Sequence record: KU521356.1
Strand: one strand, 5' to 3'
DNA: 64,000 bases
Of this stretch, positions 17,747-21,743 are shown piece after piece (the stretch's first letter is position 1; each line of letters starts with the position of its first letter). The notes beneath the pieces are model-generated. The model had not been told where the DNA came from and made no database searches. It was given only the letters and a program-made list of their open reading frames with translations. A program made the position numbers and the translations under genes.

Positions 17747-17765
17747 GCCTCCCCTAGGGGAGGCT
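17747..17765. terminator. Intrinsic terminator
   Basis: GCCTCCCC-TAG-GGGGAGGC flanked by CATA and TTTATG. Confidence 0.8.
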
Positions 17766-17840: not shown

Positions 17841-19757
17841 ATGTCTAATGAACAACAGGTTACAAATAAGAAAAAGATTAAGGGCATTGAAGCCAAACAT
17901 ATTACTTATTGTACTGATCAATTTGGTAAGTTTACAGATGCGCATTTCGTTAAAGAACGAATTCATTTTGAAGATGGTACAACTGCAAATAATTTAAGGA
18001 TGTGGGAAAACTACCAGCGTCCTTTTTGGATTACCGCAAAAGGAATGCGTAACCATAAAGAAAAGAAAGATTACGAATATGAGCGTAACTTAGTTAAATA
18101 CATGTCAACTCAAATTGACATGAAACGTAAGATTAGTAAAATCCTAGGTGACTATTCGGCTAGATCTCTTCGTCAACTAGCGCGTAGTCCTTACCTATAT
18201 GGCAGTGATGTTAGTTCAACCTGTTATCTGAAGCATGATTATCAAGAACGTTATCCTGGTCTAATCTCTCTAAACACTGTTGCTGGCGGTGACATCGAAA
18301 CCAACGTTTATGAAGCTGAGAACGATGGCCAGATTATCTGTATGTCAGTTACACATAAGAACAAAGCTTTCCTAGCCTATTTAAAACGATGGGTTAGTGA
18401 TATTGAAGATCCAGTGAAAGAGACATTAGAACAAGCACAAAAAGAAGAGGTATTATCACATCTAATTAAAGAACGTGGTCTAGATATTGAAGTAATGGTT
18501 GTTGAAACACCAGTAGATATTATTATTGAATGTTTTAAACGACTACATACCTGGAAACCAGATTTCTTCGCATTCTGGAATATTAGCTTCGACATTGGTA
18601 GAATCTTAAAAACATTAGAACACTATGGTGTTAATCCAGCTGATGTTTTTTCTGATCCATCGGTACCTAAGAATTATAGGTATTTCCATTTTAAGATTGA
18701 TGAACCTATGACCACCACTGCATCTGGGGTCACTAAATCTAAAGGACCGGAGGATCAATGGCATTGGATTACAGCACCCTCTAGTTTTCAATGTATCGAT
18801 TCTATGTCAACTTATCGAGTAACTCGATTAGCTAAAGGACGTGATCCTAACTATCGGTTAGAGTCTATTCTTAGAAAAGAACTAAACATCGATAAATCCA
18901 CGACCATTAAAAATGATAAGGACTTAGAAGATTTTATTGAAGGTTTTAATAAACAACTAGTTGACCGACCAGGCGGCGTTATTACTAAATATATTAAAAA
19001 TGTAGGTAGTAATGAATGGGTACCGGTGGATGATTTTATATTAAATGATAACTTTACCTATGGTGATTCTATTAGATATGTAATGGAATTTGGTAAGTTA
19101 ACCTTTAAAGAAACTGCACATCTTGGTGGTATCGATTGGCACCGTGAGATGCAGACTAAGCATAAAATCAAATATGGTCTTTATAACATCATCGACTCCA
19201 TTCGACTAGAACAACTTGATGAACAAGTAAATGACCTTGGTCGCTCTATAAGTCTATTCTCTAAGGCATCTGACTATAAGAACTTTAGTTCTAACCCAAA
19301 ACGACTATGTGACGATATGCACTTCTGGTATTTGAATAGACCAGAGCCATGTGTCATTGGTTCAAGTTCAGATCAGATGGTGCATGAACTTGATCAATAT
19401 GTTATTGGCCATAATGATTGGATTGTTACACTACCATCATACATGGCAGGTCCAAATGGATTGCAGTGTGTTAAAGATTTACCGAATTATAAAACCTTAA
19501 TATTCTGTCATATCGCCGACCTTGACATCGTGTCGACATATCCTAACGTTAGTCAGATTCTAAATATTGCACGTGAAACATGTGTGATGGAATTCTCAAT
19601 GATGGAAGGAATTAGTGAACACCATCGCCGTGAAGTTGGCGTAAACTTAACAGGTGGTAGGGTTAATGCTATTGAAATCACACAGAAGATCATGGGTGCT
19701 CCTAAAATGGACACCCTGCTAGAGAAGTTTATTAATACCTATAAGAACCCAAAGTAA
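17841..19757 (+). CDS. Split family B DNA polymerase, 3'-5' exonuclease plus motif A subunit (phiKZ gp82-like)
   Basis: Exo I DIETN, Exo II FWNISFDIGRI, Exo III YNIIDS and polymerase motif A DLDIVSTYP; no motif B or C in this ORF. Confidence 0.85.
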   Translation: MSNEQQVTNKKKIKGIEAKHITYCTDQFGKFTDAHFVKERIHFEDGTTANNLRMWENYQRPFWITAKGMRNHKEKKDYEYERNLVKYMSTQIDMKRKISKILGDYSARSLRQLARSPYLYGSDVSSTCYLKHDYQERYPGLISLNTVAGGDIETNVYEAENDGQIICMSVTHKNKAFLAYLKRWVSDIEDPVKETLEQAQKEEVLSHLIKERGLDIEVMVVETPVDIIIECFKRLHTWKPDFFAFWNISFDIGRILKTLEHYGVNPADVFSDPSVPKNYRYFHFKIDEPMTTTASGVTKSKGPEDQWHWITAPSSFQCIDSMSTYRVTRLAKGRDPNYRLESILRKELNIDKSTTIKNDKDLEDFIEGFNKQLVDRPGGVITKYIKNVGSNEWVPVDDFILNDNFTYGDSIRYVMEFGKLTFKETAHLGGIDWHREMQTKHKIKYGLYNIIDSIRLEQLDEQVNDLGRSISLFSKASDYKNFSSNPKRLCDDMHFWYLNRPEPCVIGSSSDQMVHELDQYVIGHNDWIVTLPSYMAGPNGLQCVKDLPNYKTLIFCHIADLDIVSTYPNVSQILNIARETCVMEFSMMEGISEHHRREVGVNLTGGRVNAIEITQKIMGAPKMDTLLEKFINTYKNPK

Positions 19758-20125
19758 TATATCAGTGGAAGCGCCGAGGAGGATATGAATGTTCATCTGT
19801 TGGTGACAAAAGATTCTCGGCTCTTTACGCAAGGCTTCCTGATGGCAGAACAATTGAGGAAGCTTGGCAGTTAGATTGTAAAGGATATCGCATATACTCC
19901 AACCATTGGAAAGCTGGTAAAGGAAAACCACCACTAGACGGGTATAATCCCAAATATGATGATTATAAAAATCTGTGGAAAGTATGGGCGGTATCTAATA
20001 AACATCTAATGGATGAATTGCGTCAGAATGCAAAAGAACATGATAACTATCTTTCTGATGTTTTTGCTTCTACTGATATTTCACAGGCACGTGCTCTAGC
20101 AGAACTACTTAATGAAGGATATTAA
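19745..20125 (+). CDS. NADAR-like (DarT1-associated type) ADP-ribosylhydrolase domain lacking its own start codon
   Basis: Manual translation: EPKVIYQWKRRGGYECSSVGDKRFSALYARLPDGRTIEEAWQLDCKGY...YKNLWKVWAVSNKHLMDEL...YLSDVFASTDISQARALAELLNEGY. First ATG is at 20009. Motifs resemble recalled NADAR ExSS/SA, ExxxQxxK, D-x-F and QAR. Confidence 0.7.
   Translation, partial: EPKVIYQWKRRGGYECSSVGDKRFSALYARLPDGRTIEEAWQLDCKGYRIYSNHWKAGKGKPPLDGYNPKYDDYKNLWKVWAVSNKHLMDELRQNAKEHDNYLSDVFASTDISQARALAELLNEGY
19748..19754 (+). other. Candidate -1 slippery heptamer C_CCA_AAG directly before the polymerase stop codon
   Basis: AAC CCA AAG TAA: X_XXY_YYZ form with the A_AAG core; the -1 frame is open for 123 further codons. 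Confidence 0.7.
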
Positions 20126-20198
20126 AAAATGGAAGGTATTCCTAATTAAATATTATCAATTGATCATTACTGCTAACATAAACTTCGACACATCATAA

Positions 20199-20221
20199 AA
20201 CCCTCCCATTACGGGAGGGTT
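20199..20221. terminator. Bidirectional terminator
   Basis: AACCCTCCC-ATTAC-GGGAGGGTT between convergent genes. Confidence 0.8.
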
Positions 20222-20228
20222 TATTTCG

Positions 20229-21743
20229 TTAACTAATTTGGTATTTTAAATTCTGATTACCGTTTAGAACATAAATCTTACCGTCATTATTAAACGTATT
20301 GGCAAAACCTGCATCCACTAAACCAGTTTCTAAATTACCTAAATTTATCCATCGTGCTAATCGTGGTTCATAATACTTAATTGGTGCGTTATTTTGATTT
20401 TCACCAGCGATTACATAAAGTTCACCAGATGGGCGTATATTAATAGCTGCACCAAGAGGTATACCTGTAGTTATTGGTTTGGACCAATTATTGTTGGTTT
20501 GATTGTACGATATGATTCCAGTGTTAACACCAGCACCAACCGTACCACCAATAACGCATACGCTATTATTATAAATACTCACTGAATAATCTTGGGTATA
20601 TTCCCCAGTATCATTAAATGCTGCACCACTGGTATATGTATCTGTAGTTGGATTGTACATTAATGTAAATCCACGATTATTTGTCGCAGTTGTATCAGCT
20701 GCACCTAATATGTAGATTAACCCATTAAGACTAGTTCCACGTGCATACCGGCAAGCTATCGTGCCTGGTGATTTTATTTCCCATGTATTAGTTGCAGGAT
20801 CATAACACTGCATATCTTTAGTAAGTACACCATCTGTGGCACTTTCACCACCATAGAAATATACTTTACCATTAAATGCAACAGCCGAGCATTGTTTAAC
20901 TGCTATAGGCGTACCAGTTGGTTGTAATGTTGTTAACTTACCCGTGACTAAATTCAGTGTACGTAGAGCAGTATTAGCATTATTCTTACCACCGTAATAA
21001 TAGACTAAGTTACCTATTTGGGCACCTGCTGCCATTTCGTTATCAGTTTCAAAATCAGTAAGTTTAATAACATTATCTTTAACGAATGGATATGTACCAC
21101 TAGCATAAACCACTGGACGCCAACCTTGGGTTGCAGCACCCGTTTCACTACTTGACGAACTAGTTATATCAATCGCATAGTAGCCACGATAGAGCTGGTC
21201 ATTAACTGGATCACTACCTGGGTCTCTTCCCCAGTTAGTAGTACCATCAGTGCTAATACCACCAGCGACCGCTTGGTTAATACCTAAGTCATTATCTGTA
21301 AATTTATAAGGCCAGTTAGCACCATTTAAATTAGATACGTGAACATTATAAAGTAACCTTTGCCATTCTGATGTGGCACCAGCCATTGTTAATAAACCAA
21401 ATTTATAAATGTTCCCCATAAATCTAACTTCATAGTCACCATTACGGAGTCCGGCATTATTAAGCCGTGATTTTTGTATTGATTTACGAGCTGGTTTCTT
21501 TGGTATGTAACAAGTAACATTTTTATTAGAGAACTTTAACCATGGTTGTCCATCATTGATTACTGTTCCAAATGTCATATTAACTAATTTAGCTGCATCA
21601 TCATAACCAAATAATTCTGAAGATGTTGTTTCACCATACAAACCTAATTCCCTTGTCCCAGCTATCAGTGTTTTAGGACCTGGATAAGGATCGGAATATA
21701 TAGGCGTATTTGTTAGTCCAGAAGACAACAATAACTCAAACAT
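20229..21743 (-). CDS. Kelch-repeat beta-propeller protein, probable virion component (phiKZ gp83-like)
   Basis: C-terminal kelch repeats (VYYYGG, KVYFYGG...YDPATNTW, LIYILG...YNPTTDTY, LYVIAG) after a phiKZ-family N-terminal domain. Confidence 0.8.
   Translation of the reverse strand: MFELLLSSGLTNTPIYSDPYPGPKTLIAGTRELGLYGETTSSELFGYDDAAKLVNMTFGTVINDGQPWLKFSNKNVTCYIPKKPARKSIQKSRLNNAGLRNGDYEVRFMGNIYKFGLLTMAGATSEWQRLLYNVHVSNLNGANWPYKFTDNDLGINQAVAGGISTDGTTNWGRDPGSDPVNDQLYRGYYAIDITSSSSSETGAATQGWRPVVYASGTYPFVKDNVIKLTDFETDNEMAAGAQIGNLVYYYGGKNNANTALRTLNLVTGKLTTLQPTGTPIAVKQCSAVAFNGKVYFYGGESATDGVLTKDMQCYDPATNTWEIKSPGTIACRYARGTSLNGLIYILGAADTTATNNRGFTLMYNPTTDTYTSGAAFNDTGEYTQDYSVSIYNNSVCVIGGTVGAGVNTGIISYNQTNNNWSKPITTGIPLGAAINIRPSGELYVIAGENQNNAPIKYYEPRLARWINLGNLETGLVDAGFANTFNNDGKIYVLNGNQNLKYQIS

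What the first reader, a model, noticed from the sequence alone, without database searches (positions are those of the whole stretch)
19745..20125. Hidden NADAR domain joined to the DNA polymerase by a -1 frameshift: candidate polymerase-tethered anti-DarT system
Seen: the polymerase subunit ends AAC CCA AAG TAA, an X_XXY_YYZ heptamer (C_CCA_AAG) directly before the stop. The -1 frame opens only one codon earlier (TAA at 19742-19744) and continues 123 codons with no ATG, GTG or TTG until 20009, ending before the operon terminator. It reads YECSSVGDKRFSALYA...TIEEAWQLDCK...LWKVWAVSNKHLMDEL...LSDVFASTDISQARALA, which matches the DarT1-associated NADAR motif order as I recall it (EISSKS..LSAF, VExAFQxxK, NPEL, FTDIEF..NCQAR). 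Established: A_AAG heptamers are the most shift-prone in bacteria (dnaX, lambda G/T); DarT1 ADP-ribosylates guanine in ssDNA and stalls phage replication; NADARs reverse this, and T-even phages carry orphan NADARs. Inference: a fraction of polymerase is made as a 761-aa fusion carrying a de-ADP-ribosylase to the replication fork. Standard gene callers would miss this.
Basis: partly seen in the sequence, partly recalled or inferred. Interest (0 to 1): 0.92.

Follow-up and report, generated by a model that had tools for sequence, protein, structure and literature searches.

The report
Frameshift-made polymerase fusion in phiKZ phages

Summary
The window is Pseudomonas phage KTN4 (phiKZ species). 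The polymerase subunit ORF (17841-19757) ends C_CCA_AAG-TAA. The -1 frame opens one codon earlier and runs 123 codons to 20125, with no ATG, GTG or TTG before 20009.

The frameshift reading is strongly supported by comparison. In 19 diverged chimallivirus lineages with this domain ("X") in the -1 frame, each has exactly one C_CCA_AAG, G_GGA_AAG or A_AAA_AAG heptamer, in phase and where the -1 frame is open. These are the three most efficient bacterial -1 heptamers. None occurs in the other 10,631 polymerase codons.

The codon at the supposed start is ATA, ATG, ACA, ACT, GTA, GTT or GTG, or the position is not alignable, so it is not a conserved start. X is under strong purifying selection. Two distant relatives encode polymerase-X in one frame.

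The NADAR/anti-DarT reading is not supported. Pfam, PDB profile search, hhalign against YbiA and T4 gp30.3, and Foldseek against the PDB all found nothing. Only weak sub-threshold Foldseek hits to viral NADAR models appeared. No DarT neighbours were found in 11 bacterial loci.

X belongs to PHROG 9995, a large uncharacterised family. Elsewhere it is fused to DUF4326, SLOG, RNase H and SF1 helicase domains. A sister clade has X in the +1 frame, which remains unexplained.

The parts
17841..19757 (+). 0-frame ORF of the DNA polymerase subunit (phiKZ gp82 homologue, KTN4_108). It carries the family-B exonuclease motifs and motif A (DLDIVSTYPN). 638 aa.
   Evidence: Annotated 'DNA polymerase' in RefSeq phiKZ. 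PMC12571901 lists PHIKZ050 and PHIKZ082 as DNA polymerase. The motifs were read directly from the translation.
19742..19744 (+). TAA in the -1 frame. It closes that frame one codon before the heptamer, leaving a permissive window of only 2 codons.
19748..19754 (+). Slippery heptamer C_CCA_AAG, in phase with the polymerase frame.
   Evidence: Conserved in 12 lineages, replaced by G_GGA_AAG in 1 and A_AAA_AAG in 6. These are the three most efficient E. coli -1 motifs (PMC4066793).
19755..19757 (+). 0-frame stop TAA directly 3' of the heptamer. It is a possible pause element. Its last A is the first base of the ATA codon.
   Evidence: A stop directly follows the heptamer in 12 of 13 C/G-type lineages.
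19754..20125 (+). Trans-frame (-1) coding region: 123 sense codons plus TAA. It encodes linker V plus domain X (IYQWKRRGGYECSSVGDKRFSA...LLNEGY).
   Evidence: phrog_9995, E 1.6e-55; AF2 pLDDT 96.8; purifying selection.
19757..19759 (+). ATA codon at the position where PhiPA3 has ATG and stand-alone homologues have Met1. It is probably a decayed ancestral start.
20009..20125 (+). Annotated 38-aa ORF (KTN4_109 / PHIKZ082.1). It is the C-terminal fragment of X called from an internal ATG, so an annotation artefact.
   Evidence: phrog_33573, 38-aa profile.
19785..19874 (+). 29-aa ORF (GAGGAGGA then ATG), out of frame inside X and annotated in some relatives. It is probably spurious, because the GGAGGA encodes Gly-Gly of X.
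20198..20222 (+). Terminator-like hairpin that ends the polymerase-X transcription unit. It is shared with the convergent gene at 20229-21743.
17747..17764 (+). Terminator-like hairpin upstream of the polymerase gene. It marks the 5' boundary of the unit.

Best explanation
The polymerase subunit gene of phiKZ-type phages (gp82 homologue) ends in a programmed -1 ribosomal frameshift site, C_CCA_AAG followed directly by the stop. Most ribosomes terminate and make the 638-aa subunit. A minority slip back one base (tRNA-Pro CCA to CCC, tRNA-Lys AAG to AAA), read GUA AUA UAU..., and make a 761-aa fusion. The fusion carries a 122-residue, compact and probably enzymatic domain X (PHROG 9995) at the polymerase C-terminus. 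That end lies just after motif A, near where the fingers of the split polymerase would follow. X was originally a separate gene whose ATG overlapped the polymerase stop (TAATG, still present in PhiPA3). In phiKZ, PS119XW, HPP-Temi, Phabio, the Noxifer clade and others the start has decayed, so the frameshift is the only plausible route to expression. Shown here: the site anatomy, its phylogenetic conservation, selection on X, and natural in-frame fusions. Inferred: that slippage actually occurs, its efficiency (probably low, a few per cent or less, since no stimulator was found), and the role of the adjacent stop as a pause. The biochemical function of X is unknown. Its fusion partners elsewhere (DUF4326, SLOG, RNase H, SF1 helicase, guanylate kinase) point to a nucleotide-, ADP-ribose- or nucleic-acid-directed enzyme delivered to the replisome. 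In a nucleus-forming phage, fusion to the polymerase may also carry it into the phage nucleus.
For: (1) Anatomy in the window. (2) All 19 distinct -1-frame lineages have exactly one in-phase V_VVA_AAG heptamer inside the window where the -1 frame is open into X. The counts are C_CCA_AAG x12, G_GGA_AAG x1 and A_AAA_AAG x6. Per-lineage chance is 0.0003-0.03, and there are 0 such heptamers in 10,631 other polymerase codons. (3) The codon before CCA encodes N, P, S, L, A or V but always ends in C (G in the GGG variant), while the upstream 30 nt are highly diverged. (4) These three heptamers are the most efficient -1 motifs in E. coli (PMC4066793; PMC5009743). (5) The 'start' codon is ATA, ATG, ACA, ACT, GTA, GTT or GTG. 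In the A_AAA_AAG clade X overlaps the polymerase 3' end by 12-32 codons with no nearby start: most of these lineages have none in the open frame, and Noxifer has TTG and GTG only 345-393 nt upstream. (6) X is under strong purifying selection in start-less lineages. PS119XW against HPP-Temi gives dN/dS 0.07. KTN4 against PhiPA3 gives pN 0.06 at pS 0.76. (7) Natural in-frame polymerase-X fusions exist: P0224 (698 aa) on a phiKZ-like contig, and P0141. (8) The polymerase gene and X lie in one unit between terminator-like hairpins. (9) X is a confident fold (pLDDT 96.8) with 27 invariant columns, many of them polar.
Against: No trans-frame protein has been observed; the supplements searched held only transcript data for PHIKZ082.1. 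No conserved stimulatory hairpin, pseudoknot or upstream SD was found, so efficiency may be very low. Five lineages keep ATG or GTG at the old start, and ATA is a weak near-cognate start, so some free X may be made. The shiftiness of A_AAG was measured in E. coli, and the tRNA-Lys complement of Pseudomonas was not checked. A sister clade (Psa21 type) has X in the +1 frame with no heptamer, which this mechanism does not explain.
Confidence: 0.82

Rival explanations
1. X is an independent gene translated by termination-reinitiation (translational coupling) at the ATA that overlaps the polymerase stop (TAATA). No fusion is made.
For: PhiPA3 and L016 have TAATG, L017 has TAGTG, and 201phi2-1 and Viktualia have an in-frame GTG at the homologous position. 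Many stand-alone homologues start with Met exactly there. ATA is a near-cognate start.
Against: The same position is ACA, ACT, GTA or GTT in HPP-Temi, L014, L024, Phabio and L037. It is not alignable or lacks a start in the A_AAA_AAG clade. There is no SD upstream of the ATA. This reading cannot explain the in-phase heptamer conservation or its replacement by other slippery heptamers, nor the in-frame fusions.
Confidence: 0.08
2. One reading: X is a NADAR-fold de-ADP-ribosylase that removes DarT1-type guanine-ADP-ribose from template DNA. On this view it is a polymerase-tethered anti-DarT factor.
For: Below the family's own members, the Foldseek BFVD list is enriched in NADAR-annotated models (TM 0.43-0.59, prob up to 0.44) and in DUF4326 proteins. 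X is fused in other proteins to DUF4326 (x5), to YAcAr or cpYpsA SLOG domains (x5), and to DUF488-N3a. DUF4326 and SLOG are partners reported for NADAR and Macro domains (PMC9503650; PMC7824862). The best, non-significant, hhalign segments fall on collinear motifs, FSA..DGRT against FSNF..DGKT. NADARs reverse guanine ADP-ribosylation, and T-even gp30.3 is an orphan anti-DarTG1 factor (PMC11543638; 10.1101/2024.07.11.602962).
Against: There is no Pfam NADAR hit at E<=10 for 50 members and no PDB profile hit. Foldseek against the PDB gave nothing better than E 2.4, and no NADAR entry appeared. hhalign probability was 0.1-0.2% against two YbiA-family profiles and against T4 gp30.3. No DarT or ART neighbour was found in 11 bacterial loci. 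There was no PADLOC hit.
Confidence: 0.15
3. X in phiKZ is a decaying pseudogene, or the missing start is a sequencing or assembly indel.
For: There is no canonical start codon. Gene callers annotate only a 38-aa remnant.
Against: The arrangement is identical in 46 independently sequenced genomes. There are no internal stops in any of about 26 lineages. Purifying selection is strong with synonymous sites saturated. The heptamer is conserved.
Confidence: 0.02
4. The frame change is made by RNA polymerase slippage (transcriptional recoding) rather than by the ribosome.
For: The A_AAA_AAG variants contain a run of six A.
Against: [quoted passage not shown] All sites are strictly in the X_XXY_YYZ phase of the polymerase frame, which matters only for tRNA re-pairing.
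Confidence: 0.02

Closest known systems
Phage lambda G/GT tail-chaperone frameshift (G_GGA_AAG) and its many phage analogues
   Same: [quoted passage not shown] The result is a C-terminally extended fusion whose extra domain has its own activity. One lineage here (L037) uses the identical heptamer. Different lineages use different heptamers and even different frames, as in the tail-chaperone set (PMC5009743).
   Different: The gene is a replicative DNA polymerase subunit, not a tail chaperone. The downstream domain also exists widely as a free-standing protein and as in-frame fusions. The heptamer abuts the stop codon.
E. coli dnaX tau/gamma -1 frameshift (A_AAA_AAG)
   Same: It is a replication-machinery gene that uses the same heptamer as the Noxifer-type clade, and recoding sets the ratio of two replisome proteins.
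   Different: In dnaX the shift truncates the protein and is driven by an upstream SD plus a downstream hairpin to about 50% (own knowledge; the review is cited). Here the shift extends the protein by a whole domain, and no stimulator was found.
IS3/IS911 orfAB -1 frameshift
   Same: It uses A_AAA_AAG or C_CCA_AAG-type heptamers, and the -1 ORF lacks efficient independent initiation. C_CCA_AAG with the IS3 pseudoknot reaches 54% (PMC4066793).
   Different: It needs a pseudoknot or hairpin, and none is detectable here. It produces a transposase, not a polymerase fusion.
NADAR superfamily (E. coli YbiA, DarT1-associated NADAR, T4 gp30.3)
   Same: Both are small domains of about 120-160 aa with a helical core and small sheets. 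Both are phage-borne, share fusion partners (DUF4326, SLOG), and give weak Foldseek similarity to predicted viral NADARs.
   Different: No significant sequence, profile or solved-structure similarity was found. There is no DarT linkage. Membership is not established.
Natural in-frame polymerase-X fusions (P0224 on L064; P0141 on L065)
   Same: They combine the same polymerase subunit and the same X domain in one polypeptide.
   Different: They need no recoding, so every polymerase molecule carries X.

Membership tests
Bacterial-type -1 programmed ribosomal frameshift site | Slippery heptamer X_XXY_YYZ in phase with the upstream (0) frame | tested here: met
   C_CCA_AAG lies at 19748-19754 in the polymerase frame. 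All 19 -1-frame lineages have an in-phase V_VVA_AAG.
Bacterial-type -1 programmed ribosomal frameshift site | A -1 ORF that is open from the heptamer, long, coding, and lacks a conserved initiation codon of its own | tested here: met
   The frame is open 19745-20125 with its first start at 20009. The 'start' position is ATA, ACA, ACT, GTA, GTT, ATG or GTG across lineages. dN/dS is 0.07-0.18 where measurable.
Bacterial-type -1 programmed ribosomal frameshift site | Conservation of the heptamer at nucleotide level beyond what the coding sequence requires, across diverged relatives | tested here: met
   The heptamer is invariant, or swapped only for another top-efficiency heptamer, while flanks are diverged. 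There are 0 such heptamers in 10,631 other polymerase codons (PMC4066793).
Bacterial-type -1 programmed ribosomal frameshift site | Stimulatory element: an SD-like sequence upstream, or a hairpin or pseudoknot 5-9 nt downstream | tested here: not met
   Folding z-scores were -1.1 and -0.5. RNAalifold gave -4 kcal/mol with 1 compensatory pair. No consistent structure was found in 16 lineages and there was no Rfam element. Only the adjacent 0-frame stop is conserved in the C/G-type sites. Such elements are not present in all prokaryotic sites (PMC4066793).
Bacterial-type -1 programmed ribosomal frameshift site | Detection of the trans-frame protein | not testable with these tools
   The supplements of two phiKZ omics papers held no protein data for this region.
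NADAR (Pfam PF08719, YbiA-like) | Significant match to the family HMM | tested here: not met
   There was no PF08719 hit at E<=1 for X or at E<=10 for 50 family members. The control YbiA homologues all carry PF08719.
NADAR (Pfam PF08719, YbiA-like) | Profile-profile similarity to YbiA-type or phage (T4 gp30.3) NADARs | tested here: not met
   hhalign probability was 0.1-0.2%. Reciprocal hmmsearch found nothing.
NADAR (Pfam PF08719, YbiA-like) | Same fold as solved NADAR structures | tested here: inconclusive
   Foldseek against the PDB gave a best E of 2.4, TM <=0.21 and no NADAR entry. Foldseek against BFVD gave sub-threshold hits to NADAR-annotated models (E 0.5-8, TM 0.43-0.59, prob <=0.44). 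No pairwise superposition tool was available.
NADAR (Pfam PF08719, YbiA-like) | Catalytic Glu/Asp and ADP-ribose-binding residues in equivalent positions; N-glycosidic hydrolase activity | not testable with these tools
   X has invariant E34 and D101, which would correspond by eye to the NADAR acidic residues described in PMC11543638. No significant alignment supports the equivalence.
DarT1-associated antitoxin / orphan anti-DarT factor | Cellular homologues encoded next to a DarT-type ADP-ribosyltransferase | tested here: not met
   Eleven bacterial loci were examined. X lies inside giant multidomain proteins (SF1 helicase, RNase H, cpYpsA SLOG) or next to an integrase or hypothetical proteins. 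No ART or DarT was found. There was no PADLOC hit.
PHROG 9995 (phage protein family of unknown function) | Full-length match to the family HMM | tested here: met
   E 1.6e-55, residues 2-122 against profile positions 2-123 of 124.
Translationally coupled independent gene (stop-start overlap) | Canonical start codon at the overlap, conserved among relatives | tested here: not met
   KTN4, phiKZ and PS119XW have ATA. Others have ACA, ACT, GTA or GTT. Only 5 of about 19 lineages have ATG or GTG.

The most novel reading that the evidence does not exclude
Nucleus-forming jumbo phages use recoding to hitch a DNA-repair-type enzyme to their split replicative polymerase. The routes are -1 slippage at three interchangeable heptamers, an unexplained +1/-2 event in the Psa21 clade, or outright gene fusion. 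X would be a highly diverged NADAR-like hydrolase that strips ADP-ribose or another defence-installed adduct from template DNA at the fork. Fusion to the polymerase would be what carries it into the phage nucleus.
Probability: 0.15. Interest if true: 0.92.

Novelty: new member of a known kind. Interest (0 to 1): 0.74.

Why it matters
phiKZ is the model nucleus-forming jumbo phage, yet this part of its replication module is annotated only as a 38-aa hypothetical ORF. A conserved recoding site in the polymerase gene would have four consequences.

1. It would correct the annotation of 70 or more jumbo-phage genomes.
2. It would add a replicative DNA polymerase to the short list of phage genes that use programmed frameshifting. 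Three heptamer types, in-frame fusions and a +1-frame clade provide a natural comparative series.
3. It would physically link a large uncharacterised enzyme-like family to the replisome, giving a direct handle on its function. The family has 837 clusters at 50% identity and is found in N4-like phages, jumbo phages and giant cyanobacterial multidomain proteins.
4. It would suggest a way for nucleus-forming phages to import an accessory enzyme by fusing it to an imported protein.

I found no report of this in the searchable literature.

Tried and rejected
- **NADAR by sequence and solved structure.** Pfam hmmscan of X and of 50 homologues, NCBIfam and PADLOC gave no informative hit. A PDB profile search gave only chance-level uL3 matches. 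Foldseek against the PDB found nothing. hhalign of X against a YbiA-family alignment, against a more diverse NADAR set from IMG/VR, and against T4 gp30.3 gave probabilities <=0.2%. Forced global hhalign and reciprocal hmmsearch found nothing.
- **Stimulatory RNA.** I folded the region in KTN4 and PhiPA3, ran RNAalifold on 11 lineages, made per-lineage folds with shuffles in 16 lineages, and searched Rfam. There is no conserved element. A GGAGGA...UCCUCC hairpin exists in the 'RRGG' subclade, but it starts about 17 nt downstream and is weak in KTN4.
- **Protein evidence.** The supplements of the Grad-seq paper and the ASO paper held no protein evidence for PHIKZ082.1. Two Tn-seq preprints held nothing on this locus.
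- **Phage tRNAs.** None is encoded in the window.
- **Not attempted.** Model coordinates are not exposed to scripts, so I could not superpose X on a NADAR structure.
Full report
**Identity of the window and check of the observation**

The region is 100% identical to Pseudomonas phage KTN4 (species phiKZ); window position equals KTN4 position minus 62,000. The ORF at 17841-19757 (638 aa) is the homologue of phiKZ gp82, annotated 'DNA polymerase' in RefSeq. PMC12571901 lists it with gp50 as one of the two polymerase genes. Its translation shows the family-B exonuclease motifs and motif A (DLDIVSTYPN) and then ends.

- The gene ends AAC CCA AAG TAA, with the heptamer C_CCA_AAG at 19748-19754 and the stop at 19755-19757.
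- The -1 frame has a TAA at 19742-19744 and is then open to the TAA at 20123-20125.
- The first in-frame ATG/GTG/TTG is the ATG at 20009.
- A -1 slip would give ...NPK|VIYQWKRRGGYECSS... and a 761-aa product.

Terminator-like hairpins at 17747-17764 and 20198-20222 bracket the polymerase gene plus this frame as one unit. Current annotations contain only a 38-aa ORF from the internal ATG (KTN4_109, PHIKZ082.1). Some records also annotate a 29-aa out-of-frame ORF.

**Is the hidden frame a real coding sequence?**

Yes.
- From the ATA at 19757 it matches PHROG 9995 over its full length (E 1.6e-55).
- It has more than 500 homologues of about 120-130 aa in the 90% clusters.
- It has 837 cluster representatives at 50% identity.
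- The family alignment has 27 invariant columns, many of them polar: E11, S13, G16, D17, R19, S21, R31, E34, Q38, D40, K42, K55-G56-K57, D101, Q110.
- AlphaFold2 gives a compact alpha/beta domain with mean pLDDT 96.8.

Between start-less lineages the synonymous sites are saturated while non-synonymous change is low. PS119XW against HPP-Temi gives dN/dS 0.07. KTN4 against PhiPA3 gives pN 0.06 at pS 0.76. I call this domain X.

**How is X expressed? Comparative test**

I collected the polymerase-X junction from GenBank phages, IMG/VR and metagenome contigs and analysed them by script. This gave four findings.

1. *The 'start' position is not a conserved start.* The codon aligned with the KTN4 ATA is:
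   - ATA in phiKZ and PS119XW;
   - ATG in PhiPA3 and L016 (TAATG overlap);
   - GTG in L017, 201phi2-1 and Viktualia;
   - ACA or ACT in HPP-Temi, L014 and L024;
   - GTA or GTT in Phabio and L037.

   In the Noxifer-type clade the N-terminus of X overlaps the polymerase 3' end by 12-32 codons. Most of these lineages have no start in the open frame; Noxifer has TTG and GTG only 345-393 nt upstream. The position behaves as an ordinary hydrophobic residue.

2. *Every -1-frame lineage has one slippery heptamer in the right place.* In all 19 distinct lineages there is exactly one in-phase heptamer of the form V_VVA_AAG, located where the -1 frame is already open into X:
   - C_CCA_AAG in 12 lineages: directly before the stop in 11, and 3 nt before it in 201phi2-1;
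   - G_GGA_AAG in L037;
   - A_AAA_AAG in 6 lineages, 36-96 nt before the stop.

   The permissive window is often only 1-5 codons. The per-lineage chance of such a heptamer is 0.0003-0.03. In the remaining 10,631 polymerase codons of these lineages there is not a single in-phase V_VVA_AAG.

3. *The first heptamer base is held at nucleotide level.* The codon preceding CCA encodes N, P, S, L, A or V, yet always ends in C (G in the GGG variant). The 30 nt upstream are highly diverged. That is selection on the nucleotide, not on the protein.

4. *The three heptamers are the best bacterial ones.* Sharma et al. name these same three as the most efficient -1 motifs in E. coli: up to 54% with a pseudoknot, about 0.3% alone, and up to about 3.7% with a favourable 3' context (PMC4066793; also PMC5009743).

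**Natural in-frame fusions**

Two more distant relatives encode the fusion in a single frame.
- P0224 (698 aa, L064:1501-3597) sits on a contig whose neighbouring gene carries the PhiKZ major capsid domain. It aligns with the KTN4 polymerase subunit over residues 47-621 and carries X at residues 561-677.
- P0141 (L065:2501-3211) joins the C-terminal part of the polymerase subunit to X in frame.

Together these results make a -1 programmed frameshift, yielding a polymerase-X fusion, by far the most economical explanation. The likely history is a separate downstream gene with a TAATG overlap whose start decayed once frameshifting supplied expression.

**What is missing from the mechanism**

I found no conserved stimulator.
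- Folding of the downstream region is no better than shuffles (z -1.1 and -0.5).
- RNAalifold gives -4 kcal/mol with one compensatory pair.
- Scans of 16 lineages show no common hairpin at 5-9 nt.
- Rfam finds nothing.
- There is no SD-like sequence upstream.

The only conserved neighbour of the C/G-type heptamers is the 0-frame stop directly 3' of them (12 of 13 lineages). From my own knowledge, not tested here, slow decoding of a stop after a heptamer can favour slippage of tRNAs in the E and P sites. Efficiency is therefore probably low, as for lambda G/GT, but it is unknown. The tRNA-Lys complement of Pseudomonas, which determines how slippery A_AAG is, was not examined. No protein-level evidence could be retrieved.

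**An unexplained sister clade**

In seven Psa21-type lineages X lies in the +1 frame. The polymerase frame runs on for about 9 codons and stops 7 nt before the YEC motif. There is no X_XXY_YYZ. An invariant GAA_AAG_AAG sits at the junction. The 'start' position is TTG, GTG, GTG, CTG, CTG, ACG or CGG. A -2 slip of tRNA-Lys from AAG to the AAA two bases back would re-pair perfectly. This is conjecture.

**What is X? Test of the NADAR claim**

The sequence and solved-structure tests were negative:
- no PF08719 hit for X or for 50 homologues, even at E<=10;
- nothing in NCBIfam or PADLOC;
- a PDB profile search gave only chance-level matches;
- hhalign of the X profile against a YbiA-family profile, a broader NADAR profile including 20 IMG/VR sequences, and T4 gp30.3 gave probabilities of 0.1-0.2%;
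- Foldseek of the confident model against the PDB returned nothing better than E 2.4 and no NADAR entry.

Three observations point the other way, none of them decisive:
- Foldseek against predicted viral structures lists, right below X's own family, a set of sub-threshold hits enriched in NADAR-annotated proteins (E 0.5-8, TM 0.43-0.59, probability up to 0.44) and in DUF4326 proteins.
- X occurs in other proteins fused to DUF4326 (5 cases), YAcAr or cpYpsA SLOG domains (5), RNase H or RVT_3 (5), SF1 PIF1/RecD-like helicase (3), guanylate kinase and DUF488-N3a. It also occurs inside giant cyanobacterial proteins. DUF4326 and SLOG are described as recurrent partners of NADAR and Macro domains in NAD/ADP-ribose conflict systems (PMC9503650; PMC7824862).

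In 11 bacterial loci no DarT or other ADP-ribosyltransferase neighbour was seen. In the N4-like phage phiAxp-3, X is a normal SD-plus-ATG gene, third from the left end.

My reading is that X is an uncharacterised, probably enzymatic domain acting on nucleotides, ADP-ribose derivatives or nucleic acids. A very distant NADAR relationship is possible; I put it at roughly one in four. It is not established. The anti-DarT role is speculation, at about 0.1-0.15.

**Comparison with known systems and novelty**

Mechanistically this is a standard bacterial-type -1 frameshift site, so it is a new member of a known kind. It is closest to lambda G/GT, where a phage makes a minority C-terminal extension with its own activity. 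It resembles dnaX in being a replication gene with the same heptamer, but differs in extending rather than truncating the product and in lacking a detectable stimulator. I found no report of recoding in phiKZ-type polymerase genes in the searchable literature, though that library is incomplete.

**Verdict**

- Observation: confirmed.
- Frameshift fusion: strongly supported by comparative genomics (confidence about 0.8) but not yet shown at the protein level.
- NADAR/anti-DarT function: not supported by the tests available, and left open only by weak structural and contextual hints.

Noticed in passing
L004 (PhiPA3 NC_028999) 2408-2713: The PhiPA3 homologue of this polymerase gene is interrupted inside motif A by a group I intron (Rfam RF00028, 71.7 bits, E 3e-18). 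RefSeq annotates only exon 1 as 'DNA polymerase'. HPP-Temi has an HNH endonuclease ORF and a split polymerase gene at the same place.
   Followed up: partly
L009, L026, L028, L031, L032, L033, L035 (Psa21-type phages), polymerase-X junction: X is in the +1 frame of the polymerase gene, with an invariant GAAAAGAAG at the junction, no slippery heptamer and no conserved start codon. This could be a -2 or +1 recoding event, or retro-reinitiation.
   Followed up: partly
window 20009-20125 (KTN4_109 / PHIKZ082.1): The annotated 38-aa ORF is only the C-terminal fragment of X. PHROG 33573 (a 38-residue profile) appears to be a family built from this truncated gene call.
   Followed up: yes
window 19785-19874: A strong SD-like GAGGAGGA followed by ATG opens a 29-aa ORF in the polymerase frame inside X, and some relatives annotate it. 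The purine run encodes Gly-Gly of X, so the ORF is probably spurious.
   Followed up: partly
L065 (GCA_009771185.1 contig) 2440-2560: In this relative the polymerase subunit is split into two ORFs by a TGA, with an ATG 2 nt later. The second part is fused in frame to X. It is unclear whether this is a true split, read-through or an alternative code.
   Followed up: no
P0136, P0153, P0170 and other 2000-6000-aa proteins; L076, L079, L083, L084 (cyanobacteria): X is embedded in giant multidomain proteins. Some have no Pfam hit at all. The cyanobacterial ones combine X with SF1 helicase, RNase H/RVT_3 and cpYpsA SLOG domains, like the 'polyvalent' proteins of mobile elements.
   Followed up: partly
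L004, L005, L011, L014, L016, L024: about 17 nt after the heptamer: In the 'RRGG' subclade the Gly-Gly codons GGAGGA pair with the Ser-Ser codons UCCUCC to form a hairpin of -18 to -19.5 kcal/mol (z down to -3.2). It is weakened in KTN4 and phiKZ (UCAUCU) and absent in other clades.
   Followed up: partly
window 20192-20248 (- strand): There is a weak sub-threshold Rfam match to the Phe leader (28 bits against a gathering score of 55) over the bidirectional terminator hairpin. It is almost certainly a chance match.
   Followed up: no
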